NCBI RefSeq assembly: GCF_035594765.1
Contig: NC_085846.1
Span: 14,929,190-14,993,189 of the forward strand
DNA length: 64,000 nt
Source of the DNA: Anolis carolinensis
Taxonomy: Eukaryota
Reading direction: 5' to 3'
The translations under genes and the position numbers were made by a program. The stretch's first letter is position 1. Every line of letters begins with the position of its first letter. Of the stretch, positions 5,060-62,934 are shown piece by piece. The notes beneath the pieces were generated by a model, which was not told where the DNA came from, ran no database searches, and was given only the letters and a program-made list of their open reading frames with translations.

Positions 5060-5107
<48 letters not shown>

Positions 5108-5673: not shown

Positions 5674-5729
<56 letters not shown>

Positions 5730-7499: not shown

Positions 7500-8680
7500 A
7501 GCATGATGGTTCCAGTCCTTCCTAATGGACCATCTCCAGAAGGTGGTGTTAGGGGAGCCTTGCTCGGCCCCATGGCCTGTAAATTGTAGGGTCCCTGATG
7601 TTATTTATTCCTGATGTTATTTAACATCTACATTAAACTGCTGTGAGAGATCATCCAGAGTTTTGGAGTTCGGTACCATCTCTACCCGGATGATGCCCAG
7701 CTCTATTACTCATTTCCATCAGATGCCAAGGAAGCAGTTCCACACCTAAAACAGTGTCTGGGGGTGATAATGGACTGGATGAGGGCAAACAAATTGAAGC
7801 TTAATCCAGATAAGACGGAAGTAATGCTGGTCTCGCGTAAGATCGATCCGAGAATAGGGTCACAACTTGAGCAAGATGGGGTTACACTCCCCCTGAAATC
7901 TCAGTTGATTCTGGACTCCGACTTAAACTTGGAAGCTCAGGTGACGGTGGTGACCAGGACTGCCTTTGTACAATTAAAACTGGTGTGCCAACTGCGCCAG
8001 TTCCTGGAGAAATCTGACTTGGCTACGGTGGTACATGCACTGGTTTGGACTACTGCAATGCATTCTAGGTGTGAAGGTGTCTGGAACCTTCAATTTGTTC
8101 AAAGAATGGCAGCCAGGTTACTCACCGGATCTACTCCTCTGCTGAAACAATTCCACTGGATGCCAATTTGTTTCCAGGCCCAATTCAAGGTGCTGGTTTT
8201 AACCTATAAAGCCCTACACGGCTTTGGTCCAGGCTACTTGAGACACCTACGATACAGACCAGGCAGACCACTCAGATGTACGGATAATCTATGGCTAAAA
8301 ATTTCTAGAGAAGGCATATTTTCCAGAGCAACACCAAAGCTATGGAATGAGCTGCCGGAAGAAATCAGAGCAGTTCCCTCCCTGATGTCTTTCAGAAAAG
8401 CACTGAAGATTTTCCTATTTGAAAAAGCTTTTAATTGATTTTATTGAGTCCTGACTTTTGTGGATATGTGGGAATTTTTAGAGGTATTTAATTGAATTGA
8501 ATTTTATCACCTGATACACTAAAGCATCCTTGTAACTTTTATGGTTTAATAGTTTGTTTTAATGAATGTTTTAATGAATGTTTTATGTTACTTTGCTTAT
8601 TTTATTGATGTTGTGCGCTGCCTTGGGTCCATTTGGAGAAAGGCAGCATAGAAATTCCTAAAATAATAATAAATAATACT
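7500..8680 (+). mobile_element. L2-clade LINE, 3-prime fragment (degenerate RT ORF)
   Basis: LFNIY...YPDDAQLY (YADD variant), WMRANKLKLNPDKTEV, QAQFKVLVLTYKALHG; frameshifted, with an (AAT) tail. Confidence 0.85.
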
Positions 8681-13156: not shown

Positions 13157-14781
13157 CAGGCAGTCCCCAAGTTACTAACATCCAACTTACAAACAACTCA
13201 TAGTTAAGAATGGGGGGGGGGGGGGGAACAATACGAAGTGAGAGAAATCTATTCCATGGAAGAGAAATTCACTCCTGAAAGAGTGATCATGGGGGAAAGG
13301 GGTCTCCACTAAAGCAATAGCACCAATTCTTGTTTCCACAACAAGCCAGTTTTTTTTTTTCAAAATCCAATTCTCACAGGGACAGAAAGTGAGGTGAAAT
13401 CTTCTGAACAGGGGCAAAAATGGCAAAATAAATGTCATAGGGGTGTTAACCCTATGCTATCTAAAGCATGTATGTATGTGTGTGTGTGTGTGTGTATAAT
13501 CTAAATCTAATCTAATCTAATCTAATCTATCTATCTAAATCTAATCTATCTAAATATAAATCTAATCTAATTTATCTAATCTAATCTAAATCTAAATCTA
13601 AATCCATAATAAAAGCCAAAACCCGTATGTGTGTATGTGGCACATGTGTCCGCTCACACAGGCAGCCTCTGGCCTCCACAAACAGGCTACACTCCGCACT
13701 GCTCAAAACCCAGCAAGTCACTACTTTGCACTGACACTGAGGTTACAGCGAACACCATCAACATATACCCCAACCCCTGCCAATGTCCTCCCCAAAGACT
13801 ACAAACCACCACCCAAGGAATACTTTCATTTGGGGACAATTTCATCCTACATTTTGCTATTTTTTCCACCACAGGCAGGCATTCCAGGGTTCTCCATTGT
13901 TGTGGAATTTCCATGACCCCGCCTACTGCCCTTCCCTTTCAAATCTGTCTGCAAAACAAACAACAGAATTGAGCTGCAACTAAACTTACTGCAGGAGTTT
14001 GGGAGATTTAAGTTGTAGTTTAGCCTGCATCAAGTCAGACCATTGTGACTCCTACTGGAGAATTTTTAGGAGTTATAGTTCACCTACACCCAGAACGCTA
14101 GAAACCCAAATAATGATGGGTTTGGACCACATTTCCCATCCATACCTGATATGACCAGATTTGACTACTGGTGGGTTTCAAGGGGAATTGACCTGGACAT
14201 TTAGGAGTAGTAGGTACTGGGATTTATAGGTTACCTCCAATGAATAAGTACTTCAAACCCCACCGATGATGGACCAGGACCAAACTTTCCACACAGAGCC
14301 CCCATAACCAATACAACCTATTGGACAAGTTGGGGGGAAAGAAAGTTATAGTTCACCTGCATCCAGAGAAACAGTGACCCCCACAGACAATGGACCACAA
14401 CCACACTTCGCACAGAGAACCCTCATGACCAACTGAACATACTGCAGGTGTTAGTGAGAAGCCAGGCAATGACCACCCAGTGACATATCTGGACCACACT
14501 TGGTACACAGATCCAAAATGCTTAACTTTTCATACTGGCAGGGTTTCGGGAGGATTGAGCCACGCTTCTACAAATTGTAGTTCACCCACTCGAAACACAA
14601 TACATAACATTGAAAGACAAATAAGGCCATTCTCAAATGACCCGGGCACCACCGGGTCCCCAAGCTAGTATATATATAAAAGCTGGATTACACTTAAAAA
14701 ATGTACCTGTTCCGACATACAAATTCAACTTCAGAAAAAAATCTACAGAACCTATCTTGTTTGTAACTTGGGGATTGCCTC
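13157..14781. mobile_element. Tc1/mariner-Tigger-type MITE with nested Helitron
   Basis: TA|CAGGCAGTCCCCAAGTTAC ... GTAACTTGGGGATTGCCTC|TA. Other copies at about 28185-28476 and 36948-37408. Confidence 0.8.
13498..14668 (+). mobile_element. Non-autonomous Helitron
   Basis: 3-prime hairpin GACCCGG-gcacca-CCGGGTC followed by CTAG|T; (TCTAA)n 5-prime region; no TSD. The 5-prime boundary is approximate. Confidence 0.7.
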
Positions 14782-26644: not shown

Positions 26645-27103
26645 ATGGCTGGGTCACAGGTACGTTGCCTGGAAAGTGAGGCGCCATATCTGAAAATAAC
26701 AGAATCAAACCCTGAATTTTATTACTGCGAGGGTCAACGGCTGGCCCTTGAAGCCTTGCTCTCTGAAGGGGAGGAGGCCTTTAAGAAGAGCCTCATTCAG
26801 GAAAAGTTGCGCCCTTTTCTGTCAGATGCAGAACTCCGGGAGCTGAAAGCAGAAGTGAAAGAAGAAGATTGGCAAACATCTGAACCTGTAGAACTGGGGA
26901 AATTGAACCATGATGGTGATGAGTCCAGTTTCACTTACTGGCCAGGACGATCAGATGAGCCCACTCCAGAGCTGGAACTGGGGTGGCCAAGCAACAATGT
27001 TTGGAAAGGGATTACAAGAGCAGAGGTTTACACACATCCACCGGGAGAAGGAGCACCGCACATCAAGGAGCTGGTCCGCAGGAGTATCCAACAGGCTGAC
27101 AAG
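26645..27103 (+). CDS. FAM83E: FAM83E coding exon 1 (DUF1669/PLD-like N-terminal domain)
   Basis: Kozak GCCATGG at 26645. Peptide MAGSQVRCL...FYYCEGQRLALEALLSEGEEAF...TYWPGRSDEPTPELELGWP...HPPGEGAPHIKELVRRSIQQADK is typical FAM83. Donor AAG|gtatta, phase 0, 459 nt. Confidence 0.93.
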
Positions 27104-30508: not shown

Positions 30509-30676
30509 GTTATTGCCGTAGTCATGGATGTCTTCTCGGACCCTGACATCCTCTTGGACCTATATGACGCGGCAGTCAGGCGGCGGATCCCTGTCTACAT
30601 TATTCTCAGCAGAAAGCATCTTCTCTCTTTCCTCATCATGGCTGAAAAAACCTGCCTTAATGTCCGTCACACAGAG
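30509..30676 (+). CDS. FAM83E: FAM83E coding exon 2
   Basis: Acceptor ttttccag|GTT; VIAVVMDVFSDPDILLDLYDAAVRRRIPVYIILS...RHTE; donor GAG|gtgatt; 168 nt, phase 0-0. Confidence 0.95.
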
Positions 30677-31325: not shown

Positions 31326-31742
31326 CAAAATGGAGGAAAGTCTGGATAAAAATGGAATGTGTTAATAAAGGCTATCTGAATTAGGGTTTTATTTTTTATT
31401 TTTACTACTGTGGTGCTTTAAACAAATCCTGGTCCCATCTAATAGGAAAGATTACGATAAAAAAAAGTTTTCCACACTAAAACTGATCTAAGCAATCTCC
31501 TTTTTTACACCACATGCTAGAAAATCATTTTTGGTCATTTTGGATATATTGGAATTTGGTTTGGGACAGTAACATATCCATCAAAAACATCTGCCTGCAT
31601 GTCAAAATAGTTTAATAATGAACTAGTGCTCAAATCTTTTGCCTTGATAAATATGAGTGTATATATTTGACCTTTAGCAGAGAAGTAGGGCAGGAAAACT
31701 TCCCCAGCCTTTTCTGTTTTAACCCTTAATCCATCTTTGTAG

Positions 31743-31870
31743 AACCTGAGAGTTCGATTCATCAACGGCTGCACGTTCCAAAGCAGACATGAGAATAAAG
31801 AGGTCACAGGGATCATGAAGGAGAAATTTGTACTGGTTGATGGAGAAGTTGTGATCACTGGAAGCTACAG
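31743..31870 (+). CDS. FAM83E: FAM83E coding exon 3 (pseudo-PLD motif)
   Basis: Acceptor ctttgtag|AAC; NLRVRFINGCTFQSRHENKEVTGIMKEKFVLVDGEVVITGSY(S); donor AG|gtaagg; 128 nt, phase 0-2. Not in the ORF track; found by reading. Confidence 0.95.
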
Positions 31871-34371
31871 GTAAGGACAACCTAACATGAAGACTATTGC
31901 ATCAGACCAAAGTCCTACTTAGTACAGCTGGCTGGTTCTACTTTGGTCAACCGGCAATGTTTAATGGCCCTACCATTCGACAGATACTGGGATACTTGAA
32001 AAAGTAAGGAAACACGTTACTTCTTCATTCAAGTTCGAAATTCTCCTACAGTAGTCAACATCCCTTTCTTCTCTCTGTTCACATCTTATATGGCATTTGC
32101 TTTGAAATAGGAACCTAATTTTCTAAGGCAGTATTTACTTTCATCATATGTAGTATAAAGACGAAAGCTATCTCCAATTCTAGCTCTACTTTCCCAATAT
32201 TTCCACCTTGCACAGAGTACTTGCAAAGGACAGTGTTAGCATGCTCTGGTTCATTCAGTTTATTAGTCTTGTCCACTGTGACTTGTCCCAAAGATGCCAG
32301 ACCTCTAAATCCTGAATCAGACATACTGTGTTGGAGCATTTCCCTTATTTTCTTTGGGAGCGATTGCACTTCCTTCTGCTTCTTTCCTATACACTTTGCT
32401 CCCGATCTGCCTGCTTGCCCGCACTCTATAATTACTAGTAGTTATGGCTGCCAGGTTCGATGGAAGACTAGTCACCATCTTTTGTTGAAGCAAAATCTTG
32501 GTGTCTTTAATGAGCTGCGTGACAGGCAAAAATACAGGAAGCAATGCTTTTGACAGCACAATGCTGGGAAAGTCTGTCTCTCTGTCATTTCAGCCTGTTG
32601 TACGCATGCTAGATGTGTTAAAGAGCTTCTGTGCGTGACGAAAAAGAAAAAAAATGTAAGATAGATGTCAACCTATCCATGAGACTGGATTATGTGCTAT
32701 TAATCATGCATTCTTCCAAGGAGTTATGATTTTGGCAGAAGAAATAACTTTCACTAACAAAGCCCGAAGTCTCCCCATTACTTGAAAACATGCTCTACTA
32801 TTTACTATTTTCTTTGGTGCAGATTTAGTTTAACTGTTTGTGTAACTAGGAAGTACTTGTATAGTTTAATTCTCTGCTATCAGCAAGAAGAGCTTATGAA
32901 AGTCAATACCTCTGTCAACAGGCTTTTGGGGAAGGGGGAGGGGAAGCTCTGGGGAGGGCGGGTGGGATTGGGTGGATATGAGTTTTAAAGGCCATTTTAA
33001 TGTATTTGCTATATTTTAATTATGTTTTTACCACACTGGTATTATTTGTTTCTTTAACTTTTGTACGGCTGTTTTTAGACTGTTTAGTGTGGATAGATGT
33101 TAGCCACCTTGAGTCCCCATGGGGAGAAAGGTGGGATATAATAATAATAATAATAATGGATGGTGTTAATATATAACTTGGCAATGGGTTTAGGGACTTG
33201 ATTTGTCCCATCTTCTATTCAATTGGATCCAACATCATTATTAAATTCGGGGGGAGGGGGATAGACTAAATGTCCATGCTGTCTGGAAGATCCAGAGAGT
33301 TGTAGTCTAAAAAGGCAACTCTTTGGAAGAGTCAAACTAGAATATTAAGAAGGTAACACACGAGAAGATCAAGTCAGATTAAAATATTAAGAAGGTAATG
33401 CATGGGTGAAGTCGAAATTTACATTTCTAAGGACCGTGGATACTGAGGGCCTTGTCCAACTTTGAATTTCCCATCCCTGATTGGCTGAGTAATAACAGTC
33501 AGCCAGTGCCTCCTGCGCTCCTGATTGTTTGGGAGGTGGGCTCAGGCAGGCTCACTCTAGGATTAATGCTGGCTTTTGATGATGTGACTGGGGACTCCCT
33601 CCTACCAGGCGGGGATGCCCAGGGACTGCCAATCAACGGTTAGAAATTTCTCCTTGGGCGGAGAAGAGCTTCCAGGAAGCTTCCAGGCTTCCAGGCCCAT
33701 ATCTGGGGACTTAGGCTGGAATTTTAAGGACAATGGATGTCGGTTTGTGGAAATTATGGGATTAGGCAAATGAGGATTAGGTCCAGAATACTGGGGACAA
33801 TGGGTGGTGATCTTCTCAAGTCCATTCCAGACAGAGCAAAAATTTGGTTCCAAGATGTCTATTGAGACGTCAGAGCAATCATATTTTCTTTGTTCAGGGA
33901 CTTGTCTAGCTGATGGCCCAGGTCCCACCAGCGGGGGATCCCAGATGACAACCATCAGTTCAGTTGTTGGAAAATAATGTCCAAATGATAATTGTTCTTG
34001 TTACACCTCTGGCCTGAGGCATTGGAGGACATTCCTGATTTGCTGGCTCTGTCCAGGATCGGGCAGAGGTCAAGATAGTTCACTGTTGTTGGCCTTATTT
34101 TTAATAGATTTATAATAAAGTGGAACAAAAATATAGTTCATAGTTAGGACAGAGAAGGGAAGCAAGCGTCTAGAGATGACAAAGTGGTGGGACAATGGGC
34201 ATGCATACAGGGGTTGAGAAAATTGTTTCTTTTCCTTTTAGCAATTTAGCTCCTATGCACATGTGCATATTAGGATCAGCAAATGTGCTTATGATCGGAG
34301 TAAAATAGGGCTATAGAATAAAGCAGAGCTGGTAATAGGTGTTAGGAAGCCCACAAAAGATACATTGTAGT

Positions 34372-34557
34372 TGTTGTTTATTCGTTCAGTCGCTTCCAAC
34401 TCTTTGTGACCTCTTGGACCAGCCCACGCCAGAGCTCCCTGTCAGCCGTGGTCACCCCCAGCTCCTTCAAGGTCAAGCCAGTCACTTCAAGGATACCATC
34501 CAACCATCTTGCCCTTGGTCGGCTCCTCATCTTTTTTCCTTCCATTTTCCCCAGCAT
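34372..34557 (-). mobile_element. RTE-BovB 3-prime fragment with TSD
   Basis: MLGKMEGKKMRSRPRARWLDGI...WRGLVQEVTKS; (CAA) tail; 12-bp TSD ATACATTGTAGT (34360-34371, 34558-34569). Confidence 0.85.
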
Positions 34558-36343
34558 ATACATTGTAGTACCATAAGTATATATTTCATTTCAGTAAACT
34601 AGATCTTTAGTTGGCCCTAGCGAGACCTCCAGCTGGGGTCCATGAGAAAAGTGCTAGTTATTATTATTATTATTCATTTATTTTTCTCCCGCTTTTCTCC
34701 CACGGGTGAGAATCAAAGCGGTGAAAAGTGCTGGTTCAGACTAGCACAAATTAAAGAGCCTGGACTCCAAAAGGTAAGTATAGAATTGGAACCTGGTGCA
34801 TATTAAAGAACCCTAAACCCAACGAGGGAGGCTCTTAGTGACCCAGCTCCATGAGATAAGCACACAGACTTGGCCAACACACATTTAAGGAGACTGGGCT
34901 CCCTGCAAATATGCGCTGATCCAGACCAGCAGAAATTAAAGAACTACACCAAAAAGTGTAAAAATAGAAAAATGAACCTCCTGGGGGGAATGAGCTGTTA
35001 CTGATCCACTGTAGGGTTGGGAACACTTCATGTGTGCAGAAACTTTACTGCATTTTGGCTTCTTGTTTTTTGAAAACTATACATCTTTTGGGGTGGGCCC
35101 CCTGTGTTTGACACCACGGGGAGGGAACATAAAGACCAGTTCAGTTTCTGCAGATATTAGTTCATCTTGTTTTCATCCATACCCTACTGTTCTATTTTAT
35201 CCCTATAAACCAGGAATTGAGTCACTAAACTTTATTTTCCCAGAGACAACATTGAAAGTATTCTTCTCAGTTTCCCTAATGCTCAATATTTACCCCCTCT
35301 TTCATGCTTGGTGATGCCCTCACACTTTTATTCTTCTTCCTTCCTTCTATGACATCATTGAAATGATATCGCTCCCTGCTTTGTCTGGCAGCTTAAATTA
35401 GAAGTCCTCAGTGGACTCTGCCAATGAGCTTTTAGCATCCATTGTGATCTCACTGCAAAAGCAGATATTGTGCAGAGATTCTATGAAGCCAGAGGTTGGA
35501 GCTCATTTTATCTCCTGGGTGGACTTACAAGGTTGGAGATTGTCTATCTGTAGCACGTGCTACAAAGACACAAAAACCCAGAAACAAGAACTTTGAGAAT
35601 CTGGTACACCAAATCAACTAGCCCTTTGTAACTGGAGCCCAAGAAAACCTGGTTCTGCCAAAAGATATGTTCTGAAGCTTTGCGGTATTCAGTATCTTCC
35701 CCTGGAGGCTAGCCACATCCAAAGGCTTTTGAATTCTGAATTCATTTTTAAGAGGACTTATATTTCTACAACAGAAAAATCCAAGTTTTAAAATTTTTGT
35801 TTCTGTGAAGCCGTCTTCTTGAAGCCACTGATTAAGCTGAAGGCCTTTCTCACTTCCATAGTCAACTGTCCTCTGTCTCTCTGAAGAACTTATAACTGTA
35901 GGAGAAGATACACCTACCAAATATAATATACATTTGAATGATTAAAGCTTGGACCCTACTACAGTAACAGAAGAGTTACAGGAAACCCCAGTTCACCTAT
36001 TGAAATCTTCCTGTGAGGAAAGAGGAAATATAAATCTAATATTTTGGAAAGTAAAGTTCTAATATTAAGATTTTTTTCTGGATCAGGAAACTGAAACCAT
36101 TTATTTTAATTGAAAACTAGACCTGAAAAGGGAGCTGCTGATCTAGTTCTGAAGCCTTGGACTATATATCAATTCAAGTGAAAAGGCTGTGGAAATTGGA
36201 AGAAAATACCTCCTTCTCAAATAATAGTAATAATATATTATCAGGTGGAGAGAATTCTAGGTGGTTGCAAACACCTACATGTCCATACTATTCCTCTGTG
36301 ATTTCAGAAGAAGAAAGAACTGGCACTTTTCCTCCACCACATA

Positions 36344-36718
36344 ATGACACATTCCTGGTGCCTAGGTCTTGTATGCCTTCTGGTCTGTGTGTTGCCCTCC
36401 GTTTTTTCCAAGGACTGCTACTATTGTGATGTCAGTCCCACCACCAAATGTCCCTCTATCAAGATGAGTTGTGAAGAAGATCAAGACTGCTATGTGGGTG
36501 AAGGAGTTGCATTGGGAGTCCCAATGGTTCACAACAAGGGCTGTACCCGTGCCATCAACTGTGGGAAAGAGCAGCCTGTGACCTATAGGGGGATCACCTA
36601 CAGCTTGGTTACCATCTGCTGTAATGGACAGCTGTGCAACACAGCGGAGGCCATAGCAAAACCTTCTCTCTTTCTGCTGCTTGCCTTCACCATCATGCTT
36701 CTGCTGGGCTTCATTTGA
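36344..36718 (+). CDS. SPACA4: SPACA4/Bouncer-type Ly6/uPAR (three-finger) GPI-anchored protein, nested in FAM83E intron 3
   Basis: 124 aa. N-terminal signal peptide, 10-Cys LU domain (KDCYYC...NKGC...CG.E.PVTYRGITYSL...CCNGQLCN) and hydrophobic C-terminal GPI signal. Closely resembles mammalian SPACA4 as I recall it, and SPACA4 is known to nest in FAM83E. Confidence 0.93.
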   Translation: MTHSWCLGLVCLLVCVLPSVFSKDCYYCDVSPTTKCPSIKMSCEEDQDCYVGEGVALGVPMVHNKGCTRAINCGKEQPVTYRGITYSLVTICCNGQLCNTAEAIAKPSLFLLLAFTIMLLLGFI

Positions 36719-36748
36719 TTTAACACGAGTTACAAAACATTTTTTTTA

Positions 36749-36754
36749 AATAAA
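36749..36754 (+). terminator. Poly(A) signal of SPACA4-like gene
   Basis: AATAAA 30 nt after the TGA, followed by GU/U-rich sequence (gtctgtggcatttttc, ttgtggctgtggtgtgatgttgtg). Confidence 0.7.
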
Positions 36755-36947
36755 GTCTGTGGCATTTTTCTTTAAAAGCTGAATCCTTGTGGCTGTGGTG
36801 TGATGTTGTGCTCCACCCCACAAATCGTAGCCTTTACCATCTAGTAAAGTGGGAACAGGCAAATTCAAGTCACAGTCTGGTCCTCCAGCAATCCCCAAAT
36901 GATCATTCCTCTTTTCCATCATTTAGTGGCTCCCATGCTTCCCTATA

Positions 36948-37237
36948 CAAGCAGTCCCTGAGTTACAAACATCCAACTTACAAACTACTCATAATTAAGA
37001 ACATGAAGTGAGAGAAATCTGCCCCTAGGAAGGGGAATTCACTCCCAGAAGAGTGATCATGGGGAAAAGTTCTCAACTGAAGCTTTCTCATCAATTCTTT
37101 GTTTCCATAACAAGCCAAAATTTTCAAAATCTAATTTTCACAGGGACAGGAAGTGGGGTGAAATCTTCTGAATAGGGGCACAGACAGCAGAACAATCACT
37201 ACAGGGGTTTTAACCCTTTCCTATGCTATCCAAGGCT

Positions 37238-37306
<69 letters not shown>

Positions 37307-37408
37307 GGCTGGATTTACACTTTAAAAATGTACCTGTCCCAACTTACAAATTAATCTTAAGAAAAAAACCTACTGAACCTATCTTGTTCGTAACTTGGGT
37401 ACTGCCTG
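36948..37408. mobile_element. Tigger-type MITE containing (ATCT)n microsatellite, just 3-prime of SPACA4
   Basis: Same termini and body as 13157-14781; TA flanks. Confidence 0.75.
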
Positions 37409-38378
37409 TATATCTGTTCCCAATGCAAAAGATTTTTTTTCTCCCAGCGTTTAACTGCTGGCAATAAGAATATATTAATATGTATATTAATATATTTAGT
37501 CCCATCATTTCCCTTCGGTTGTGCCCATCTATAGCCTCTGCCCCTGAGAGCATTCCCAAAATTGACTTGTACTTTCAGGCTAAGCTTTTTTTTCCTGCAC
37601 TCTTCACATAAACAGTAACTGCATGTATTTTGTTGCTTCTATATATTAATTCACTATTGAGGAGGTTGATGAAGATGATAGTTAAATAATATTTCCATAG
37701 CACTCTTAAGGATAAAAACAACCTAGGATACTCCAGCTAACAGCACAGTTCATCCTGAACATGCCGATCCTGTGTTTATGGCTAGGTCTTCTGCATCCAT
37801 TAAGACATTACAGTTTGTTCCCTTGTGAAGGCTGCAGCAGATTGCTGTGTGGAATGATGCCACCTCTACTGTCTCCCAAGTTCAGGCACAATTTCTCCTT
37901 GTCGCTTTTGGATAGCAATGAATCATACAGCCCCACAATAATCCTAGAAAGACTTCTGAGTGTTTTGCTTATAAGTTTCTTCACTTTTCCTACCAGCTGG
38001 CCATTTACTACTTTGAATGCATATTGTTGTCTCGGCATTTTAATCCAAAGTCTGATGTTGATGATCTCACATTTGGAAAAAAAAATTGCTAAAGTTACTC
38101 ATTGCTTCTCACAAGAATAAAATTAACCAAGAATTTCATTCCTACTGTCTCTGATTCTTTACACTGAGTATGCCAGGGGTGGAACGACAACTTTCTGTAA
38201 GCCAAGCAGGTGCTATAGCACTGAGATTAGATTCTTCTCCAATATACTCATGAGTGTTGTTTGTGATGGTGAGATATGGAAGTCTGAGGAACTGTTTTTT
38301 CAAAGGCATGGAAATGTTAGATCATGGTGATGGTCTTTTAAGAGGCCTTTTGACTTAAGCAAATTATATTCATATATA

Positions 38379-39658
38379 TTAGCTTGGGGACCTGGTGATG
38401 CCCAGGTTATTTCAAAAGGGCATTTCTCGGCTGGGTTCAGTTCTCTCTGAAGAAGGGTGAATTACGATTCCCATATGCCAAGGTCAATCACTCCCAAACC
38501 AGGCCTGTATGCACAGTGGGCCATGTTGGGTCTGTGTATCAAGTTTGGTCTGGAGCTGACATTGGCTGGGTTCAGGGCTCTATGCATAAGGGTGAACTAC
38601 AACTCCCAGATCCAAGGGCAATCATCCCCAAACTCCGCCTGTATGTACAGTTGGCCATGTTGGGTCTGTGTGCTAAGTTTGGTCCAGATCTGACATCGGT
38701 TGAGTTCAGTGCTTTCTGGATAAGGATGAACTACAACTCCCAAAATCAAGGTCAATTCCCACACACTCCTGCAATATGTTTAGTTGGTCATGGGGCTTCT
38801 CTGTACCAAGTTTGGTCCCAGTCCATTGTTGATGGGGGTCACAGTTTCTCTAGATGCAGGTCAACTATAACTCCCATCAAGTCCAATGTTCCCCAAACGT
38901 CTCCTGTATGTTCTGTTGGTCATGGGGAGTCTGTGTGCCAAGTTTGGTCCAGGTCTGTCATTCGTATGGTCCGCAATGGTCTGTGGGAACTGAATAGGGT
39001 GAAGGTACTGCAAATCCCATCATCCATGGTCCATCCTCCCCCAAACCGCACCAGGTTGTAAAGTGCGTCATGGGGAGGTCTGTGTGCCAAGTCTGGTCCA
39101 GGTACATCATTTGTGGGGGTCACAACGGTCTCTGGAAGTACGTGAAGTTACTGCAAGTCCCATCATCCGTGGCAAGTTTGGTCCACATCCATTGTTGGTT
39201 GGGTTCACAGTGCTCTCTGGATGTAGGTGAACTACAACTCCTATAAAACAAGGTCAGTTCCTCCAAACCTGGTCATAGGGGTTCTGTGTGCCAAATGTGA
39301 TCAAGGTCCAATGTCGGTAGGGGTCACAGTGCTGTGTCTACAACTTCCATTATGTGGAGTCAATCCCCCAAGCCCCTCCAGTATGTTCAGTTGCTGATCA
39401 ATTCCTGCTTGCTGTGTGCCATAGGAAAGGGTTAAGGGAGAGGCAGTGGGCAAGGTCATGTAAATTCCACACCAATGAAGAAAGGAACACTGGGATGTGG
39501 TGCTCACTATAATCTGCAATGTCATTGGAGGGAATGCTTTAGGTGGCTCCTCAGCACTGTGGGTTATAGCTGTTTGTGGAGGTGGGAAGCTGTCTGTGTA
39601 GGTGGACACCCCTACCACATACACAGATAAACATTTGCACTTTTATTATGTGTACAGA
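38379..39658 (-). mobile_element. Non-autonomous Helitron (second copy)
   Basis: On -: A|TC start and ...acctgggcatcaccaggtccccaagCTAA|T end, homologous to 13498-14668. Confidence 0.7.
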
Positions 39659-40839
39659 TAGGTGTGTGTGTGTGTGTGTCACACATATTTATTGTTGTTT
39701 GCCTTCAAGGAGTTTCAACGTAGGTGACTCAAAGCTGAGCCTATCATGGAGTTTTCTTGGTGATAATTGCCTGGGACAGTGGAGGTACTTTTGCCTTCCT
39801 CTGAGGCTAAAAGTGTGACTTGTCCACATCAACCAGTGGCTATTAATTATTGTGTGCCATGGATTCTGACAATGTTCTTTGGAGTTCCTTTAACTGTACG
39901 GTTCCATGTTTAACCCAAACCTAAAATAAAAATAATTGTGTAGAACAAGGAAAATGTAGCTGAATAAAACTATCCAACCAAGCCTGCATAGCTGTTCCAG
40001 TTTGCATTGATTACATAATGATAGATTTTAATCACTGTACATTTTCCTCTTGGGGCATTTCTGAAACAAGATTTCTCTCTAGAGGTATATGAAACAATGA
40101 TTGGCACCCACTGCAGATAGGGGATACAGTGTAGGGAAAATCCAACCCAATGCAGGTAAATTTGGAAGTTAAGAAAATGAGCACGGAACTATTCAGTGCA
40201 CACTTCCCACTACCTGCTCTTCCTTGCTTATCTCTTTCAGAATGGCTGCATTTTGTTGCACTTCTAAGTGCTTTTGTAAGCCACCTTGAGTCCCTTTTGG
40301 GAGATGGTGGTGGGATACAAAGTTTTACTATTATTAGTATATACTGTAGTTCCATCCATTTGATTTGCTACAGTACCTTTGAGGAACAGTAGCAAACCAT
40401 AGTTTGCCAACTCTGGCAAGCATGACAAACCATAATCAGGCTTTGTTAATAATGACTTGATGGGAGATCTTTGTCAAATTATGGCAAAGGAGAGAGCATA
40501 AAGTATTGCAATTGGAAAATGAAAGTTTAGAGTGTGTTGTAGAATAAGTATGCAGGTATACTATCTTGAACAGCTATAACAGCTATCTTGAAACTGGCAA
40601 AACTACCTCTGGTTGTCCCTGAAAAATATCAATTTTTAAAAAGTACACCTCCTTTCCTCCTTAGAAAATGTAATTATACCAAGGAAAGTTCTGTCATTCT
40701 ACACAAACAAAGTAAGTCCTGTGAGAACAGTTAAAAGAGATGGATCTGTTCAGCCTCGGGCAGGAGGAGAACTACTCTTTGCCTCTGAATAGCTATCCTA
40801 CACAAGATGAAATAGTGCTAGTTCTTTGTTGCTTTAGGG

Positions 40840-41527
40840 CAGGGGTCCTCAAACTTTTAAAGCAAAGGGCCGGTCCACAATCCTTCAGACTGTTGAAGGG
40901 CCAAATTATCATTTGAAAAAAAAAAAAACGAACAAATTCCTGTGCACACTGCACATGTCTTATTTGTAGTGCAAAACAACAACAACAATGAAAGAACAAT
41001 ACAATATTTAAAAATAAAAACAATTTTAACCAAAATACATTTATCAGGATTTCAATGGGAAGTGTGGGCCTGCTTCTGGCCAATGAGATAGTCAGGTTAA
41101 TTAGGATTGTTGTTGTTGTTGTTGTGTGGCTTCAAGTCATTTCAGACTTTGGGCGAGCCTAAGTCTAAAATGTATTTATTTATTATTTATTTATTTACTA
41201 CATTTGTATCACACCGTTCTCACCCCAAAGGGGACTCAGAGTGGCTTACAAACTATATGTACATACAATATATTATATTATTAGCATAGCACACTATTAG
41301 CATTATATATTACTATATTGAACTATAGCACTATACTGTAATATTATTAGTAATATTATTAGTAATATATAGTTAATACTATTATATGATATTATTATTA
41401 GTGTTATATTGTATTACATTATAATATTATTATACAATATATTTTATTATAAAACTGAGGGCAGGGGCCAGGTAAATGACCTTGGAGGGCCGCATGTGGC
41501 CCCCGGGCCTTAGTTTGGGGACCCCTG
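40840..41527. mobile_element. Non-autonomous hAT element
   Basis: TIR CAGGGGTCC(T/C)CAAACT; perfect 8-bp TSD CTTTAGGG (40832-40839, 41528-41535). Confidence 0.9.
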
Positions 41528-44500
41528 CTTTAGGGGGTAGGACTAGAACTGTGAGTGGAAATGCAGGGAAACAGCTGTTAGTTAAGCATTAGGAAAACTT
41601 CCTAATGATCAGTGATGTAATATATTACGTAGCAGAATCTCCTTCTGGAAACATTTAAGCACAGGCTATCTGGCCACTGTCAGGAATAAAGTCGTTGCAT
41701 GGTACATGGATCCTGTCCTGATCAGTAAATTGGACTGGATCATCTCCAAGCCATTCAATCTGTAAATATTTTATGATTTCGACCAGAATTGCAACATTAA
41801 AAAGAGGAGAAAATCCAGTGTCTGCCCTGTTGTTTTATGGGTTGTCTACTAATGCTTCTTCTCTTAGCCAGAGCTTAGAAAAATTACATATTTGGACTCC
41901 AGCTCCCAAAGTTCCCAGACAACATAGCCACCGGCCATACTGGCTCAGAGATTCTGAGAGTTGTCTAAATAAGCAATTTTTCAAGCCGTTTTGTGATACT
42001 GCTACAGAATGGACTGCAGTTTGGAATTGCATGAGTAACCACTAAACATTTTGGAGAAATAGTGAAGTTGTTGGAGGCTAGGTGGGAAAGAGATTCAATG
42101 ACTCATAAAAGGTGCGGAGAAGCTAACAATGGGGTAGATCAACCATTAAGCCAGATGGTTGGCTCAATTAATTCTCTGTCACAAGAGAAGTCTTGACAGA
42201 TCACATTAACGTTCCAGATAACTCCACATCCTGTTTCTCAGTATCAGGCCAGATTTTCCTGGTAAGCCCACCAGCATGACATCAACAGTGACTGGGAGGA
42301 ATGTTCTTTCTGAACGTGAAGGTTCCATTTAGTTACGAGCCATGCTAGCTAAAGATTTCTGGGAGTCACAGCCAAAAATGCATTGATTCCAGACTCTTTG
42401 GGAAGGAATTGTGTAGGTCACTATATATTGTTTGATGGCATCTTACAGCAGTCTAGCTTAGCACAGCTAATAGTGAAGAATTCTAAGAGCTGTTATTCAA
42501 CAACCCATAAGGAAGCATTTTTCTGACTTCTACTTTAGAAGAGTTTGTTATGTTGGTCAAGGTCCCTTCTCTTGTTTAAAGAAAGGATGGCAAATTAACT
42601 GTACATTATTTTTTTAAATTTTGAACATATTACTACTCAGAAAGTTCATAGAGAGTTCAGGTGTTAGACAAGAGAGAGTAAAACAGCCATTGTTTCCACA
42701 CTATACATAAAATGTGCTTTGTGTGGCGTTTAGAGTCCTTCCAGATTGGTCTTAAAGAAGTGTAAGTTCTTGAGCATTGTTTGTTGTTGTCTCCACATCC
42801 ACTCATTTCATTAGTTTGTCTGTTTCTTGAAACTGTACAGATGCTTTCAGATCTTTTTAAAAGCGGGGTGTAGGTGCTTTGCTGTGGCCCTCATACGGTT
42901 TGTTTTCCTCTGATTTTTTAACAGGAGTTATAGTGCATAAATGTCACTTCACTATAGGAATATACGGTAATATAAAAAATTAACAGAAAGAAAAAAGGGA
43001 TACCTTTTTGTTCTGATAAGTCTCAGAATTTTAAAAAAATCAAAGAGAAGTGGGTTCAACCAGACTTCCTGAAAATGTCAATTATTTTATTGTACCTGCA
43101 TATTTACAGGTTTTCTTGTTCTTACATTTTTTTCCCTGTGTAATGTAACATTCCAGAAATTGATTTGCTCCTATTTCTACTCAAGCTTTTAAAATATTAT
43201 TTAAGACTAAAAAATGCTTAAGCAAAACATGCTAGCTCAGTATAAGGATCATTTTGTTTTAAGTGCTAACATTCCTCTTTTAGTTGCTTGACCTCTGTTG
43301 AATCTATACCCTAGCTGCATGTACTTGTCAGCCCTCTTTACTAGCCCTGCATCAGTAAAACACATCAACAAGCACCATTTTCATTTTGGTGTAAACTAGG
43401 TTTAAAAAATAAAGCTAATTGGAGAGTGGGAAAACGTTTTGAGTAGCATCAGGAATTCACTGGAAATACATGGAAACAAGTTTAATGTCATTGGGATATC
43501 AGAAATCAAAATCAGTTTGTACAGAAATGAAGCCTGGCATTTCCCAACACTTTGACCATCTGGAGAGTGACAGGACCACATGTGAAGCTGGTACAAGGGA
43601 TTTCCAGAAAATAATCCAGGACAACAAAAATTTTGTTTGAATTTTTAAATAAGCAAAACCAATAACTACAGTGATAAATCTCACAACCTCCCAACACATT
43701 TGTTCCTCCTGGAGGATCCTTGTATCCTTCTTTGCCTCCTCTCTCTTTTATTTTCTATATTGTTTGTTGTAGTTCTTTCTGCAAAAGCGAGTAATAATGG
43801 CTGATTGTTTGATGTAAATATAGGAAGCATCTGTTTTGAAGATTCCTTACTCAGCTCAAGGGTTTGCCTCTCAATCTCACAGGGTTGTTGTAGGGATCAA
43901 GTATGGAATTCTAGCTATATGGCCATCCGTAAAAGTCAGATAGGACATAAATCATATGAATCAGTCTTTTCCAACTTAGTGCCTTGCAGATTTATTTTAC
44001 TACAACGCCTAACAACCCACAAACCGTCATGATGCAATTTAATACTTCTCTTATAGTTTGTCTTTCTGCACTTTGACACATCTGAGATGGAATGAGAAAA
44101 TGATGAATCACAGAATCGGAAAAGACTACATGGGCCATCCAGTCTGGCCCCGCCATGCAACAAAAGCACAATCAAAGCATCCCTGAAAGACGGCCATCCA
44201 TCCTCTGCTTAAAAGCCTCCAAGGAGGAGGATTTTACTCCTAGGCAGTTCTTCCTGATGTTCAGGTGGAATGTCATTTCCTGTAATTTGAACCCATTACT
44301 CTGAGACCTAGTCTCCAGGGCAGCAGAAAACAAGCCTGCTCCCTCTTCCTTATGACAGCCTTTCAAATATTTAAACATGGCGACTTGGCCCAAATCTGTC
44401 ATGGATCGTATCACCCATTCAAATAATTCTTTGCACTGTAAACTGATTCCTACCCTGGAATAGAAATTTCAAAATTCAAACCCCTCCACTATTCAGAGAA

Positions 44501-45465
44501 ATTTCCAGCATGCAGAAAACCATGGTAAACTTAAGGTTAAGGTTAAAGAAAGGCATTCCCAACAATTAGCATTCTTCCCTCACCCCAATGAACAATGGGT
44601 TTTCCTTATAAATGCATACCTCAGTAGTCAGACTTCCAGATGAAGCCTGTGTTTACCTTCTGATGACTAATCACCAAAAGCACACTGGAATGCAAGACAT
44701 CGGGAGGTGACAGTACATTATAGGACAAACAAATATCTTTCACCACTTAAGGGAGAACAGTTTATAAATATATACTTATTGTCTAACTTGAGTGGTGAGG
44801 CAACTTTTAAAAGTGACCATGCCACTTCCAACAAGCTGCATGAAGCACTGTAGTATTGTTTACATCATACGTCTTTAAGGGACGTTTAGTAGGCTACACT
44901 ATCAAGTAACTACATCTTGCCTATTCCACTGAACTGTTTTCTTGCACACCAGATATGTGTGTGACCAACTGCTTATTACTCAATATAACTCAGCTGATTG
45001 AACTGTAGTTTCTAGGATCTCAGCAATTTCAAAACTTCAATTTCCAGAACTTCTTGAAATCCTTAATTTGGAAATGCAATGGAAAAAGTTGTTTGTATTC
45101 CAGATAGACCATTTGGCTGCTTCCAACTTGAGCTCTACATGCAAGTAAGCAGCCATTAAGTATTTATGGTAACTATGGTTTAGCTGTTATATTTCAGAAT
45201 AATGTGGTTCTTTTACCTTTGAGTATTTTCAGAAGAGGGTGAAAATGCCAAGATTAAAGGTTCATATAAGAAGAAGCAGTTTCCATTAAAGGGTCAGAAA
45301 CCAAACTGTACAAAACACACAGGTAAAATTCTGAGCCAGACTAAGGAAAAGTTCCTTATATGGACTACAGCTCTCAGAATCCCAGGGTCACCATTAAAGC
45401 TGAGATATCCTGGAGTTAAAGGGAGGTGTTAATATTTTTAAGCTGTAGAAGATAGTAATGGATGA

Positions 45466-45845
45466 TCTGCCTTTATGGAACTCCCTCCCCAGCGATATCC
45501 GGCAAACCCCATCCCTCCTGGGATTTAGAAGAAAACTAAAAACTTGGCTCTGCACCCAGGCATTCAGCGAATAAGCTCACGGGCTGATGTAATCGGGTCG
45601 CAAATCTGTAATTGTAGCAGTAGTGAATGACTGAGGATGGTGCAATATTGCTGCCTTGCAGCGTTTTAATTTTTGTATACTTTTAATCATGTTTTTATCA
45701 TGTTTTTATCATGTTTTAATTGTTTTGTTTTTATAGTATATTTGTTGCTGGCCCTCGTGGCAGAATGTAAGCCGCTCTGAGTCCCCTCGGGGAGAAGGGC
45801 GAGGTATAAATGCATGTAATAAATAAATAAATAAATAAATAATTT
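45466..45845 (+). mobile_element. L2-clade LINE 3-prime end
   Basis: LWNSLPSDIRQTPSLLGFRRKLKTWLCTQAF* followed by UTR and (AATA)n tail. Confidence 0.75.
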
Positions 45846-45962
45846 ATCTGCCATGATCAAAACTTCTTATTGCATAGCTAATGACCACACTGGAGAATTT
45901 GGGGAGTTGTACTCCAAATAAGAGACTTTTTGAAGCTCTGAATATTCTGTTCTCCTCAACAG

Positions 45963-46566
45963 CTTCACGTGGACTGATGCTCGCTTGAACCGTCAACTTG
46001 TCACACGGCTTACAGGAGAAGTGACAGAAGCTTTTGACCGGGAATTTCGAACCTTGTATGCTGCCTCCTGTCCCTTGCCAACTCTGGAGGTGTCACCTCG
46101 GTCTCAGCCCACATCCACAACTCCATTGCCAACCCCCAATGGCCCAGATGCAGCTCCATTCATCAGTGTCCTGGATGGGGTGCAGCTATCCAACCGTATT
46201 TCAGAGCGGCGTTCTGTGGCTCCTCAACCTGTGGCCAAAAGCCGTGCTGGCGAGTGGGATCTCGTATTAGCCTCACCAGCCACAGCAGAAGACCCTATGC
46301 TACCTGTCGCATCTCCTGAGGTATCAATCCGAAACCGGCTTGCAGCATGGCGTGGCAAGGATATTTCCGGAGGGGGCCAGCAGGGCACTCCTGAGGGACA
46401 CAACGCTCTAAGTGATATTCTTAGGAATGTACAACGGAATCGGCTCTCAGTAGCCAAAACTACAGGGGCCCGTCCAAGTAAGTCACTGTGGGATCTCAGC
46501 CGGCTCTCCGGATCCAGCACAACAGGATGGGGATGGAATGGGACAGATTCACCTGAGGATGCCAAG
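45963..46566 (+). CDS. FAM83E: FAM83E coding exon 4
   Basis: Acceptor tctcctcaacag|C completes AGC. FTWTDARLNRQLVTRLTGEVTEAFDREFRTLYAAS contains the FxxxF CK1-docking motif; ALSDILRNVQR...GARPSKSLWDLSRLS is FAM83E-like. Donor AAG|gtaagc; 604 nt. Confidence 0.94.
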
Positions 46567-47760
46567 GTAAGCACTGCTCACCTTGAGTTGGAACTCAAGT
46601 CAATGGTTCATTTTACAGACCCCAGCCTTCTTGTCCCCCACTATCCACTGCTCCAGTTATCAATTCCTTTTCTTCTCAGTGAATCTTTAGCTCCTGGTCC
46701 CTGCAGAGCTTAGCAATTTTCCTTTCTCAACTACAGTTCCTAGAATCCCACAATCAGAATGGCCATTGGCTCATAAATAAAAAGCTTGGTAAAGGCAGAA
46801 AATATCAGCTCATTCTCTACTAATTTTCTTCCATTGTATTTTCCCCCTACTATAGCTCTATTATTAGATTGCAACTGCTATCATTGTTGTTATAATTAAC
46901 CAAACAGTATCACTTCCTATAAAACTATATTTTTGTTATGTGCCTTCAAGCGGACTCCAACTTACAGCAACCCTATCATTGGGTTTTACCAGTAATTGAG
47001 ATTTTTCATTGTCATCATCAGAGATCAAAAGAGTATGATTTGCCCAAAGTCACCCAGTGTGTTGCCAGGGGCGAGTAGGAATTCAAACCCTAATTTTCTA
47101 TTTTAAAAAAAACTTGGAAAAAAAAGCAAACTTGTTTACTACCTCCTACACTTTTTTAAACAAAATAATGCAGATTGCTTAGAACTTAGCCTCTAACCCA
47201 GAAAGAGCATATTAACTGTAGTTTTTTCTAGACACATCCCAGTCCATGTCTGAAAGAAGCATACTTTGCACTTGATAGCAAATTAATGTTTTGATTAAGG
47301 GTTCTAGTGGGACAGTATTTCCTTGCATCTATATGATATTTTTGACTGCTGGTCATTTGTGTAGTGGGGGAAATGACAGACAGATAAAAACCATAGGAAA
47401 ACCTTGTGTCTCTGCAAATTTGGCACTTGAATCAGACAGCTGGTGTGCTTACTCATAAGTAAGGACTCCAGTCTGCAGTATGAAAAGGCAAGCTGGCATG
47501 CCTACTCAAAAGCAGACTGACTTGAGGAAATGCCTGTGTCTCACATTAGACTAAAGTTTTTCTTCCCTTGTAAACCGATCAGGTCTCAAGATAGTAGCTG
47601 AATCTGCTGTGCAAGCCATGAACTAGGGGCTAGTTTCAAACAAGTCTCAATTAATCCGTGTTGTCCCATATTTTCAGTTGGTTCTAAAATGCCTCAGATT
47701 TTCTCTTCTCCTCCCCCTGTTCTTTTTCATCCTTTGCTTACTTCAGTTGCTAGTGGCTGA

Positions 47761-51642: not shown

Positions 51643-51882
51643 AAGTGGGGCTACCAGGATACACCAGCAAAGGAGCTGATGAAACAACGTGGAACTGGCC
51701 ATACCCCAGATGAGTCGAGGACACCCATCTACCTAGCACATGGACGCATGACCACTTCCCCTGCCTACCCAGCTTTAGGAAGACTACAAGGACAGCTATA
51801 CCATCACACGGCTGGTACAGGCCTACCTCGGGCTTGGGTGCATTCAGGGAAACCTCAATATGGGCATCAGATACGGTTCTGA
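51643..51882 (+). CDS. FAM83E: FAM83E coding exon 5 (terminal)
   Basis: Pyrimidine tract then aag|AAG TGG; KWGYQDTPAKELMKQRGTG...GHQIRF*. The five exons sum to 1599 nt = 532 aa + stop. Confidence 0.88.
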   Translation, partial: KWGYQDTPAKELMKQRGTGHTPDESRTPIYLAHGRMTTSPAYPALGRLQGQLYHHTAGTGLPRAWVHSGKPQYGHQIRF

Positions 51883-61652: not shown

Positions 61653-62934
61653 TATTTGTTATGTTGCTCACAGCTCAAGGCAGGGTATGACACAATAAGA
61701 CCCTAATATAAAGCAGCATAGGTTAATTATTATGGCAGAAAAAAAGACATTTCAGCTGATGGTGCCGTTTATCCCACATCTGAATCTCATTTCCTCATAT
61801 TATAGCAAGAATTGTAAGGGCGTCACTTAGGAGGCTTACAAAAAAAACACAACAAAAAAACGAAGGGTAGCCATCCATGTTGCACAGAAAGAAAATGCTG
61901 ATCGTTCATATTTGATTGAATACGTCTCGTATGAAAATTGAAAAAGCACGAAAATGTGGCCAAAGCTTTACAACTTCAATGAGGCTCAGTCTAGCAGACA
62001 GTCTGATTTATTTAAATTTTTATTTTTCCGTTTCAGCTGGAACCTCACATCTTCTGACTATATATCCTCCAGCTGTTCCAATTTGGTGGGGGAAATTCCC
62101 AATTAATCCTCTGCTGTCCCTCTTTGTCAGCTGCTTTTAAAATGTTCCAGTTTCTCTCTCCTCCCCCTTTGCCTACAACGTACTCCAATTGCTGGAAATA
62201 GTTTTCAGAAGGGAGAGGAGAGGGAGCATTTCACATTTGCTAGACTCAGGCAAAAGCAAACTCATGCAACCTTTCTTTGTTTGCGTGGTTTCCCAAACAT
62301 TTGGGAAGCTGCAATTTGTTCTGTTCAGTCAGGACAGCGGGATTAGAATTTAGACACCAAGGTTGTGGATATGATGCTTGACTTTAAAGCAGGCTTGAGC
62401 AAACTTCGGCCCTCCGGGTGTTTTGGACTTCAACTCCCACAATTCCTAACAGCCTGTCGGCTGTTAGGAATTGTGGAAGTTGAAGTCCAAAACATCCGGA
62501 GGGCCAAAGTTTGCCCATGCCTGTTTTAAAATGTCCATTAACCTTTCCCCAACTCAGAGCCACAAGCACTGTTGGGTTGCAATTCCCATTATCCCCAGTT
62601 CACAGGGCAGAATAATCAAATGTGATGGGAGTTGTTGCTCAATAATATCTGGGAATCAAAATTTGGTAAAACCTAAAGGGCACCGACCACTATATAAAGA
62701 AAAAATAGAGTTGGTCCTCTGTATCCACAGATTCTTCATCCATAGATTCAACAGCCCTTTGAAGGCAACTATAAGGCTGATGTGGCCCTCTATGAAAATG
62801 AGTTTGGCACCCTGTTTAAGAAGAATGAACTGGCAAAAAACATTTCTGAGTATTCCTTGCCTTAAAAAACTCTGAAATCCATGGGATCAGCATATAATGT
62901 GAAGGCAAGGACTCACACAGAAGTCTTCCTATCT

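What the first reader, a model, noticed from the sequence alone, without database searches (positions are those of the whole stretch)
36308..36754. SPACA4/Bouncer nested in FAM83E intron 3 on the same strand as its host
Seen: both FAM83E and the Ly6/uPAR ORF are on +. From memory, human and mouse SPACA4 lie in the equivalent FAM83E intron but antisense. Inference: a local inversion occurred in one lineage, or this assembly is mis-oriented. Sense nesting places a terminal exon with acceptor (atttcag| 36307) and AATAAA (36749) inside the host pre-mRNA, so the two genes could compete through intronic polyadenylation. This gene family mediates sperm-egg recognition (egg Bouncer in fish, sperm SPACA4 in mammals).
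Basis: partly seen in the sequence, partly recalled or inferred. Interest (0 to 1): 0.7.

Follow-up and report, generated by a model that had tools for sequence, protein, structure and literature searches.

The report
Lizard SPACA4 nested sense in FAM83E
This is the lizard copy of the sperm-egg recognition gene SPACA4, a working single-exon gene inside an intron of FAM83E and pointing the same way as its host, as in other lizards, snakes and turtles, whereas the one placental mammal examined has it flipped; a real but modest evolutionary inversion, not an assembly error.

Summary
Observation confirmed. The intact 124-aa Ly6/uPAR ORF at 36344-36718 (+) is the squamate SPACA4 ortholog (84% identical to Anolis sagrei SPACA4). 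It lies in FAM83E coding intron 3 (31871-45962), and FAM83E is also on +.

The same sense nesting is seen in Sceloporus, Eublepharis, Thamnophis and two turtles. So it is the state in every sauropsid examined, not a mis-oriented assembly. In the eutherian Galemys, SPACA4 sits in the homologous FAM83E intron but antisense, as a published synteny table also shows. One ancient inversion of the small SPACA4 unit is the simplest reading. Its polarity is unresolved: amphibian and fish homologs lie outside FAM83E, and marsupial copies show no FAM83E within 10 kb.

Two RNA-like runs give contigs colinear from about 35560 to 36783, straight through that site. The AG is not conserved in gecko or snake. 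The 784-nt leader is the most ATG-poor stretch of the window. SPACA4 is therefore an autonomous single-exon gene with a long 5' UTR.

The AATAAA at 36749 is conserved in all sauropsids examined and fits one contig end. Competition with FAM83E by intronic polyadenylation remains untested; spliced FAM83E mRNA co-occurs in the same runs.

Modest interest.

The parts
36344..36718 (+). SPACA4 coding sequence, 124 aa including signal peptide, 10-Cys LU domain and hydrophobic C-terminal tail; stop included
35560..36783 (+). SPACA4 transcript as seen in RNA-like contigs: one exon, no joint. X10 contig covers 35560-36783; X2 contig covers 35597-36973
   Evidence: table 8 records 16 and 21; tables 2 and 5. 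The strand is inferred from the ORF, the poly(A) signal and the ATG depletion
35560..36343 (+). Long 5' leader: 3 ATG where 14.8 +/- 4.2 are expected per 784 nt, the minimum of the whole window. All three uORFs are 21 codons or shorter
   Evidence: The 784 nt upstream of the start codon in Sceloporus, Eublepharis and Thamnophis hold 4-5 ATG against 13-15 expected
36290..36307 (+).
36749..36754 (+). AATAAA poly(A) signal followed by a GU-rich element. The X10 contig ends 29 nt after the hexamer's last base
   Evidence: hexamer and TGGTGTG block conserved in four squamates and two turtles
26645..27103 (+). FAM83E coding exon 1 (SACK1 domain, N-terminal part)
30509..30676 (+). FAM83E coding exon 2
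31743..31870 (+). FAM83E coding exon 3. It is spliced on both sides in RNA-like contigs of X2 and X10
31871..45962 (+). FAM83E coding intron 3 (14.1 kb), host of SPACA4
45963..46566 (+). FAM83E coding exon 4 (end of SACK1 domain plus disordered region)
51643..51882 (+). FAM83E coding exon 5 (C-terminus, stop included). The five exon lengths sum to 1599 nt, which is 532 codons plus stop

Best explanation
The stretch is the SPACA4 gene of an anole-like iguanian lizard. It is an autonomous, intronless transcription unit of about 1.2 kb (roughly 35560-36783, + strand), with its own promoter region, a long ATG-depleted 5' UTR, a 124-aa ORF and its own AATAAA. It encodes a secreted, probably GPI-anchored three-finger (Ly6/uPAR) protein. 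By orthology to mouse SPACA4 and fish Bouncer, this protein acts on the gamete surface in sperm-egg interaction (inferred). The gene sits in coding intron 3 of FAM83E on the host's strand. That sense nesting is shared by every lizard, snake and turtle examined, while the eutherian examined carries SPACA4 in the homologous intron on the opposite strand. So the nesting predates the sauropsid-mammal split, and the small SPACA4 unit was inverted once in one of the two lineages; which one cannot be told. The host evidently tolerates the internal sense-strand poly(A) site, since fully spliced FAM83E mRNA is present in the same RNA samples. I take the two genes to be largely independent, with at most minor premature termination of FAM83E at the SPACA4 poly(A) site (inferred, not shown).
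For: Identity: UPAR_LY6 hit above its cut-off. Best hits are named SPACA4, at 84% to Anolis sagrei and 57-68% to other squamates. A profile search finds mammalian SPACA4 and fish Bouncer next. The 10 cysteines and the CN motif are invariant across 15 orthologs. The AlphaFold model (pLDDT 83) matches only three-finger proteins such as GPIHBP1, PSCA and uPAR. In the tree it is sister to A. sagrei, inside a squamate-turtle clade next to eutherian SPACA4.

Transcript: two RNA-like runs from different studies cover only FAM83E exon 3 and one colinear block, 35560-36783 or 35597-36973, at depths 214 and 509, with nothing in the rest of the intron apart from repeats. The leader is the window's unique ATG minimum, and the same depletion occurs in other squamates. 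Mouse Spaca4 is also single-exon (PMC8488580).

Orientation: sense nesting in Sceloporus, Eublepharis, Thamnophis, Gopherus and Natator. Antisense in Galemys, between the homologous exons. Published consensus '<-FAM83E, SPACA4->' (PMC5377540).

Host tolerance: the exon 3 contigs of X2 and X10 carry 1147 and 945 further letters on one side, and 1356 and 282 on the other, that do not lie on the intron. That means they are spliced.
Against: Contigs give no strand, no true ends and no rare isoforms. A minor spliced form using the 36307 AG, or FAM83E transcripts ending at 36783, cannot be excluded. The run records do not say RNA or name a tissue; RNA is inferred from the exon-only coverage. The start near 35560 could be an assembly break rather than the transcription start. 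Only one eutherian locus was read directly. Marsupial SPACA4 genes showed no FAM83E within 10 kb, so 'mammals are antisense' is shown for eutherians only. No outgroup has the nesting, so a single inversion is a parsimony argument.
Confidence: 0.82

Rival explanations
1. Functional coupling. Because SPACA4 is sense-nested, its promoter activity and conserved poly(A) site cut short FAM83E transcription in cells where both are active, as at the mouse H13/Mcts2 locus. On this reading the arrangement is kept in sauropsids for that reason.
For: AATAAA plus the GU-rich element is conserved on the host's sense strand in six sauropsids. The sense orientation is kept across squamates and turtles. Both genes are present in the same RNA-like runs. 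At H13/Mcts2, transcription of a nested gene drives intronic polyadenylation of its host (PMC13309782).
Against: Spliced FAM83E contigs cross exon 3 in the same runs. There is no RNA coverage of the intron between exon 3 and 35560 in X2 or X10. The intron holds 12 AATAAA and 10 ATTAAA on the sense strand anyway. Mammalian nested pairs show no strong orientation bias and no general expression correlation (PMC11694760). Conservation of orientation needs no selection, because inversions of 1-2 kb are rare.
Confidence: 0.1
2. The ORF is the terminal exon of a spliced transcript, entered at the AG at 36307 from an upstream SPACA4 exon or from FAM83E exon 3.
For: A good polypyrimidine tract plus AG ends at 36307 and is shared with Sceloporus.
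Against: Contigs of two runs pass through 36307 with no joint, and they start about 750 nt upstream with no foreign letters. The AG is absent in Eublepharis and Thamnophis. The upstream 784 nt is ATG-depleted like a 5' UTR. Joining exon 3 to 36308 gives a stop after 12 codons, out of frame with SPACA4 (read from the sequence).
Confidence: 0.05
3. The sense orientation is an assembly artefact of this genome. The SPACA4 block is bounded by repeats at about 34.4-34.7 kb and 36.95-37.4 kb.
For: Short-read DNA contigs break at those repeats, so none spans both junctions.
Against: Five other sauropsid assemblies have the same orientation. Intron blocks on both sides of the repeats are colinear and same-strand with Sceloporus.
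Confidence: 0.02
4. There was no inversion. SPACA4 entered the same FAM83E intron independently in the sauropsid and mammalian lineages, for example by retroposition of an intronless gene.
For: SPACA4 is intronless. Amphibian and fish homologs lie elsewhere. Marsupial copies are not within 10 kb of FAM83E exons.
Against: It requires two hits in the same 3-14 kb intron of the same gene. The amniote proteins form one clade that follows the species tree.
Confidence: 0.05

Closest known systems
Eutherian SPACA4 (SAMP14), nested in FAM83E
   Same: Orthologous protein: an LU domain with 10 Cys, 40% identity to Galemys. It is a single coding exon and sits in the same host intron, between the third and fourth coding exons of FAM83E. 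Reptile expression is reported as testis-specific, like mammals (PMC8488580; bioRxiv 10.1101/354688).
   Different: Here the gene is on the host's strand; in Galemys and in the published consensus it is on the opposite strand. The lizard host intron is 14 kb against about 3.3 kb. The lizard mRNA seems to carry a leader of about 0.8 kb.
Fish Bouncer (bncr)
   Same: Closest non-tetrapod homolog. It is a small GPI-anchored three-finger protein acting in sperm-egg binding (10.1101/354688).
   Different: Bouncer is egg-expressed. The gar gene is not near FAM83E. Identity is about 29-34%.
H13/Mcts2 host/nested pair (mouse)
   Same: An intronless protein-coding gene nested in a host intron with its own promoter and poly(A) signal, where nested transcription can end host transcripts early (PMC13309782).
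   Different: Nothing here shows host transcripts ending at or before SPACA4. There is no CpG island (CpG o/e 0.17 and 0.0) and no evidence of imprinting.

Membership tests
Ly6/uPAR (LU, three-finger) domain proteins | Profile match to the UPAR_LY6 domain at the curated threshold | tested here: met
   PF00021: 26.6 bits against a cut-off of 24.8, residues 24-100
Ly6/uPAR (LU, three-finger) domain proteins | Eight to ten cysteines in conserved spacing, ending in CCxxxxCN | tested here: met
   C25, C28, C36, C43, C49, C67, C73, C92, C93, C98 and N99 are invariant in 15 orthologs
Ly6/uPAR (LU, three-finger) domain proteins | Three-finger beta fold | tested here: met
   AlphaFold model with mean pLDDT 83 and six strands. 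All top Foldseek PDB matches are three-finger proteins (GPIHBP1, PSCA, uPAR, C4.4A, Lynx, snake toxins, TGF-beta receptor ectodomains). E-values are weak, 3e-3 and above, with TM up to 0.6 by target
Ly6/uPAR (LU, three-finger) domain proteins | N-terminal signal peptide and C-terminal GPI-attachment signal | tested here: inconclusive
   Hydrophobic helices at residues 3-15 and 109-123 flank the domain. No dedicated signal-peptide or GPI predictor was available
SPACA4/Bouncer orthogroup | Closest relatives are SPACA4 or Bouncer rather than other Ly6 genes | tested here: met
   The tree places it in the amniote SPACA4 clade (SH-aLRT 85-99)
SPACA4/Bouncer orthogroup | Conserved genomic position (amniotes: inside FAM83E) | tested here: met
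   Same homologous intron in five sauropsids and Galemys
SPACA4/Bouncer orthogroup | Germline-restricted expression and a role in fertilization | not testable with these tools
   It is abundant in two RNA-like runs whose tissue is coded. Testis expression in reptiles is stated in PMC8488580 and 10.1101/354688.
Host/nested pair with intronic polyadenylation interplay (H13/Mcts2 type) | Nested gene wholly inside a host intron, same strand, with an active promoter of its own | tested here: met
Host/nested pair with intronic polyadenylation interplay (H13/Mcts2 type) | Host transcripts that end prematurely at or before the nested gene when it is active | tested here: inconclusive
   Only contigs were available. 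They show spliced FAM83E and no intron coverage upstream of SPACA4, but they cannot show rare forms or ends

The most novel reading that the evidence does not exclude
Sense nesting is functional in sauropsids. On this reading, SPACA4 transcription and its conserved poly(A) site switch off full-length FAM83E in spermatids, or read-through from the strong SPACA4 promoter feeds FAM83E exons 4-5. The inversion between the sauropsid and eutherian arrangements then changed how the pair is coupled. That would make this locus a natural experiment on how orientation governs host/nested interference over about 300 million years.
Probability: 0.08. Interest if true: 0.55.

Novelty: new variant of a known kind. 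Interest (0 to 1): 0.3.

Why it matters
SPACA4/Bouncer is one of the few fertilization factors conserved across vertebrates, and how its expression switched from egg to sperm is an open question. This locus shows that the amniote gene has sat in one FAM83E intron since before sauropsids and mammals split, and that it was flipped once. Reptiles (sense) and mammals (antisense) are both reported to express it in testis, so the flip does not track the sex switch, and that link can be set aside. The pair offers a clean evolutionary contrast for studying sense versus antisense nesting. By itself, though, sense nesting is common, and the gene is already annotated in related species.

Tried and rejected
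1. Assembly mis-orientation was rejected by five other sauropsid assemblies and colinear flanks.

2. Use of the 36307 acceptor was rejected by the RNA contigs, the lack of conservation and the reading frame.

3. Polarising the inversion failed. Xenopus SPACA4 lies antisense inside an IMD+SH3 gene. The caecilian has three tandem copies with no host gene. Gar Bouncer lies between unrelated genes. Monodelphis and Gracilinanus SPACA4 and Dromiciops SPACA4-like show no host gene, and no FAM83E exon lies within 10 kb in Dromiciops. No bird, crocodilian or monotreme ortholog surfaced in the two word searches or among the 30 best-scoring profile hits that were named; this does not show absence.

4. 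Delimiting the inverted segment by turtle-versus-Galemys DNA alignment failed, because only the coding sequences align.

5. I first thought tetrapod SPACA4 might be a retrocopy of an intron-bearing fish gene. I dropped this because zebrafish bouncer is itself described as single-exon (10.1101/354688).

6. An Rfam scan of 35-39 kb found nothing.

7. The first structure job and the first tree run failed for technical reasons and were repeated.

8. The FAM83E exons were searched one by one.

Full report
**What is there.**
- The window holds an intact ORF at 36344-36718 on the + strand: 124 aa from ATG to TGA.
- It matches Pfam UPAR_LY6 above the curated cut-off, 26.6 against 24.8 bits.
- A profile of nine squamate sequences, searched exhaustively, next finds mammalian SPACA4, amphibian homologs and fish Bouncer.
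- Ten cysteines and the terminal CN motif are invariant across 15 orthologs from skate to mammals.
- The AlphaFold model (mean pLDDT 83) has six strands between an N-terminal and a C-terminal hydrophobic helix. Its PDB matches are all three-finger proteins, though with weak E-values.
- A quick maximum-likelihood tree puts the protein next to A. sagrei (99) inside a squamate-plus-turtle clade. That clade groups with eutherian and then marsupial SPACA4, apart from amphibian and fish sequences.
- The gene is therefore the SPACA4 ortholog of an anole-like iguanian lizard.

**The host gene.**
- Two long + strand ORFs carry the two ends of the SACK1 (FAM83) domain.
- Comparing open frames of the Sceloporus, gecko, snake, turtle and Galemys loci with the window, and reading the splice sites, gives five coding exons: 26645-27103, 30509-30676, 31743-31870, 45963-46566 and 51643-51882.
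- Their lengths sum to 1599 nt, or 532 codons plus stop. Annotated products in other squamates are 534-535 residues.
- I searched the exons separately and did not join them into a spliced protein for any search.

**Orientation in other genomes.**
- Exact-protein look-ups returned the annotated neighbourhoods.
- In Sceloporus undulatus, Eublepharis macularius, Thamnophis elegans, Gopherus flavomarginatus and Natator depressus, a SACK1 gene on the same strand spans SPACA4. tblastn places SPACA4 between the homologs of exons 3 and 4 in each.
- In the eutherian Galemys pyrenaicus the order is SULT2B1 (+), FAM83E (-), RPL18 (-). SPACA4 (+) again lies between the homologs of exons 3 and 4.
- A direct turtle-to-Galemys DNA comparison aligns the FAM83E exons in one orientation and the SPACA4 coding sequence in the other.
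- Table 1 of PMC5377540 gives the same consensus, '<-FAM83E, SPACA4->, <-RPL18'.
It is not a property of this assembly. Intron blocks on both sides of SPACA4 are also colinear and same-strand with Sceloporus.

**Polarity.**
- I could not tell which lineage carries the derived state.
- Xenopus tropicalis SPACA4 lies antisense inside an IMD+SH3 gene. The caecilian has three tandem copies with no overlapping gene. Gar Bouncer lies among unrelated genes.
- Monodelphis and Gracilinanus SPACA4, and a Dromiciops SPACA4-like gene, have no called host within 10 kb. The Dromiciops DNA shows no FAM83E exon within that distance.
- A single origin of the nesting before the sauropsid-mammal split, followed by one inversion, is the parsimonious reading. 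Two independent insertions into one small intron is the unlikely alternative.

**The transcript.**
- Of the four runs laid on 31600-37599, X1 and X6 cover everything evenly, so they are DNA.
- X2 and X10 come from different studies. Apart from repeats, they cover only FAM83E exon 3 and a block over SPACA4.
- The exon 3 pieces sit inside contigs of 2633 and 1357 letters whose other letters do not lie on the intron, so they are spliced mRNA.
- The SPACA4 contigs are colinear with the genome: 35560-36783 (depth 214) and 35597-36973 (depth 509). They have no joint and no foreign letters at their starts.
- They pass straight through the AG at 36307, so the proposed acceptor is not used in the dominant form.
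- That AG is shared with Sceloporus but absent in gecko and snake.
- Joining exon 3 to 36308 would read a stop after 12 codons, out of frame with SPACA4 (from the sequence).
- Contigs give no strand, but three things point to +: the ORF, the AATAAA at 36749-36754 with one contig ending at 36783, and the ATG count.
- The 784 nt from 35560 to the start codon hold 3 ATG, against 14.8 +/- 4.2 per 784 nt across the window. This is the only place in 64 kb that low. The three uORFs are 2, 9 and 21 codons.
- The 784 nt upstream of SPACA4 in Sceloporus, gecko and snake hold 4-5 ATG against 13-15 expected.
- I conclude that squamate SPACA4 is a single-exon gene with a long 5' UTR. Mouse Spaca4 is likewise a single exon (PMC8488580).
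- A CACGTG E-box at 35554-35559 abuts the X10 contig start. I only note it.

**Poly(A) site and the interference idea.**
- The AATAAA and a TGGTGTG-type downstream element are conserved after the stop codon in all four squamates and both turtles. A competent sense-strand poly(A) site has therefore sat inside FAM83E intron 3 throughout the sauropsids examined.
- Whether FAM83E transcription is cut short there is not shown.
- Against a strong effect:
  - Spliced FAM83E contigs co-occur with abundant SPACA4.
  - No RNA covers the intron between exon 3 and 35560.
  - Low-depth contigs continue downstream of the site in X2, as expected of read-through from the SPACA4 promoter.
  - The intron holds 22 other AATAAA or ATTAAA hexamers on the sense strand.
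- In mouse and human, nested pairs show only a slight bias to opposite orientation and no general expression relationship (PMC11694760).
- The H13/Mcts2 locus shows that nested transcription can drive host intronic polyadenylation (PMC13309782), so the idea is legitimate but untested here.

**Comparison and novelty.**
- The gene and its host are known and annotated in related species, and the eutherian nesting is in published synteny tables.
- What appears new is the contrast itself. Only four held papers mention both genes, and by their titles and abstracts none is about this gene pair. The one I read lists the two genes only in a synteny table. The contrast is same intron, opposite strand, sauropsids against eutherians.
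- Both reptiles and mammals are reported to express SPACA4 in testis (PMC8488580; 10.1101/354688). So the flip does not explain the egg-to-sperm switch.
- This is a sound but modest finding.

**Limits.**
No monotreme, crocodilian or bird could be examined.
- Run kinds and tissues are coded. RNA is inferred from the coverage pattern.

Noticed in passing
window 37749-37942 (wider block 37714-38064): A non-coding element about 1 kb downstream of SPACA4 is better conserved than the SPACA4 coding sequence: 83% to gecko over 195 bp and 79% to snake, against 73-74% for the CDS. Its indels are not multiples of three, and there is no Rfam match. It always lies downstream of SPACA4, 0.2-1.7 kb after the stop. 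It was not detected in turtles or Galemys. An X2 contig at depth 8 appears to extend over it.
   Followed up: partly
window 46567-46713 and 51643-51882: The open frame of FAM83E exon 4 runs on to a stop at 46713 if unspliced, which makes it look terminal. A GTAAGC donor at 46567 and a fifth coding exon at 51643-51882, conserved in turtles and Galemys, complete the gene.
   Followed up: yes
window 34390-34600; 32940-33170; 36950-37400: These are very high-copy repeats. Summed contig depth reaches about 248,000 in DNA run X1 at 34400-34599, against about 11 for unique sequence. A (TCTA)n microsatellite lies at about 37240-37317. These repeats bound the SPACA4 block and break short-read contigs.
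   Followed up: no
L005 (Xenopus tropicalis), the Rhinatrema place, L006 (gar): Xenopus SPACA4 is nested antisense in a different host, an IMD+SH3 gene. Rhinatrema has three tandem 123-aa copies. The gar locus has a second Ly6-like hit about 3.5 kb downstream of Bouncer (14340-14600).
   Followed up: partly
Proteins P0015-P0030: Marsupials and vespertilionid bats carry several diverged 'SPACA4-like' paralogs. The marsupial SPACA4 loci examined lie outside any called host gene.
   Followed up: partly
window 7764-8438 (+) and 62881-63336 (+): These ORFs look like C-terminal parts of LINE reverse-transcriptase/ORF2 proteins, judged by eye from the translations. A low-complexity tandem array lies at about 4990-5880.
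   Followed up: no
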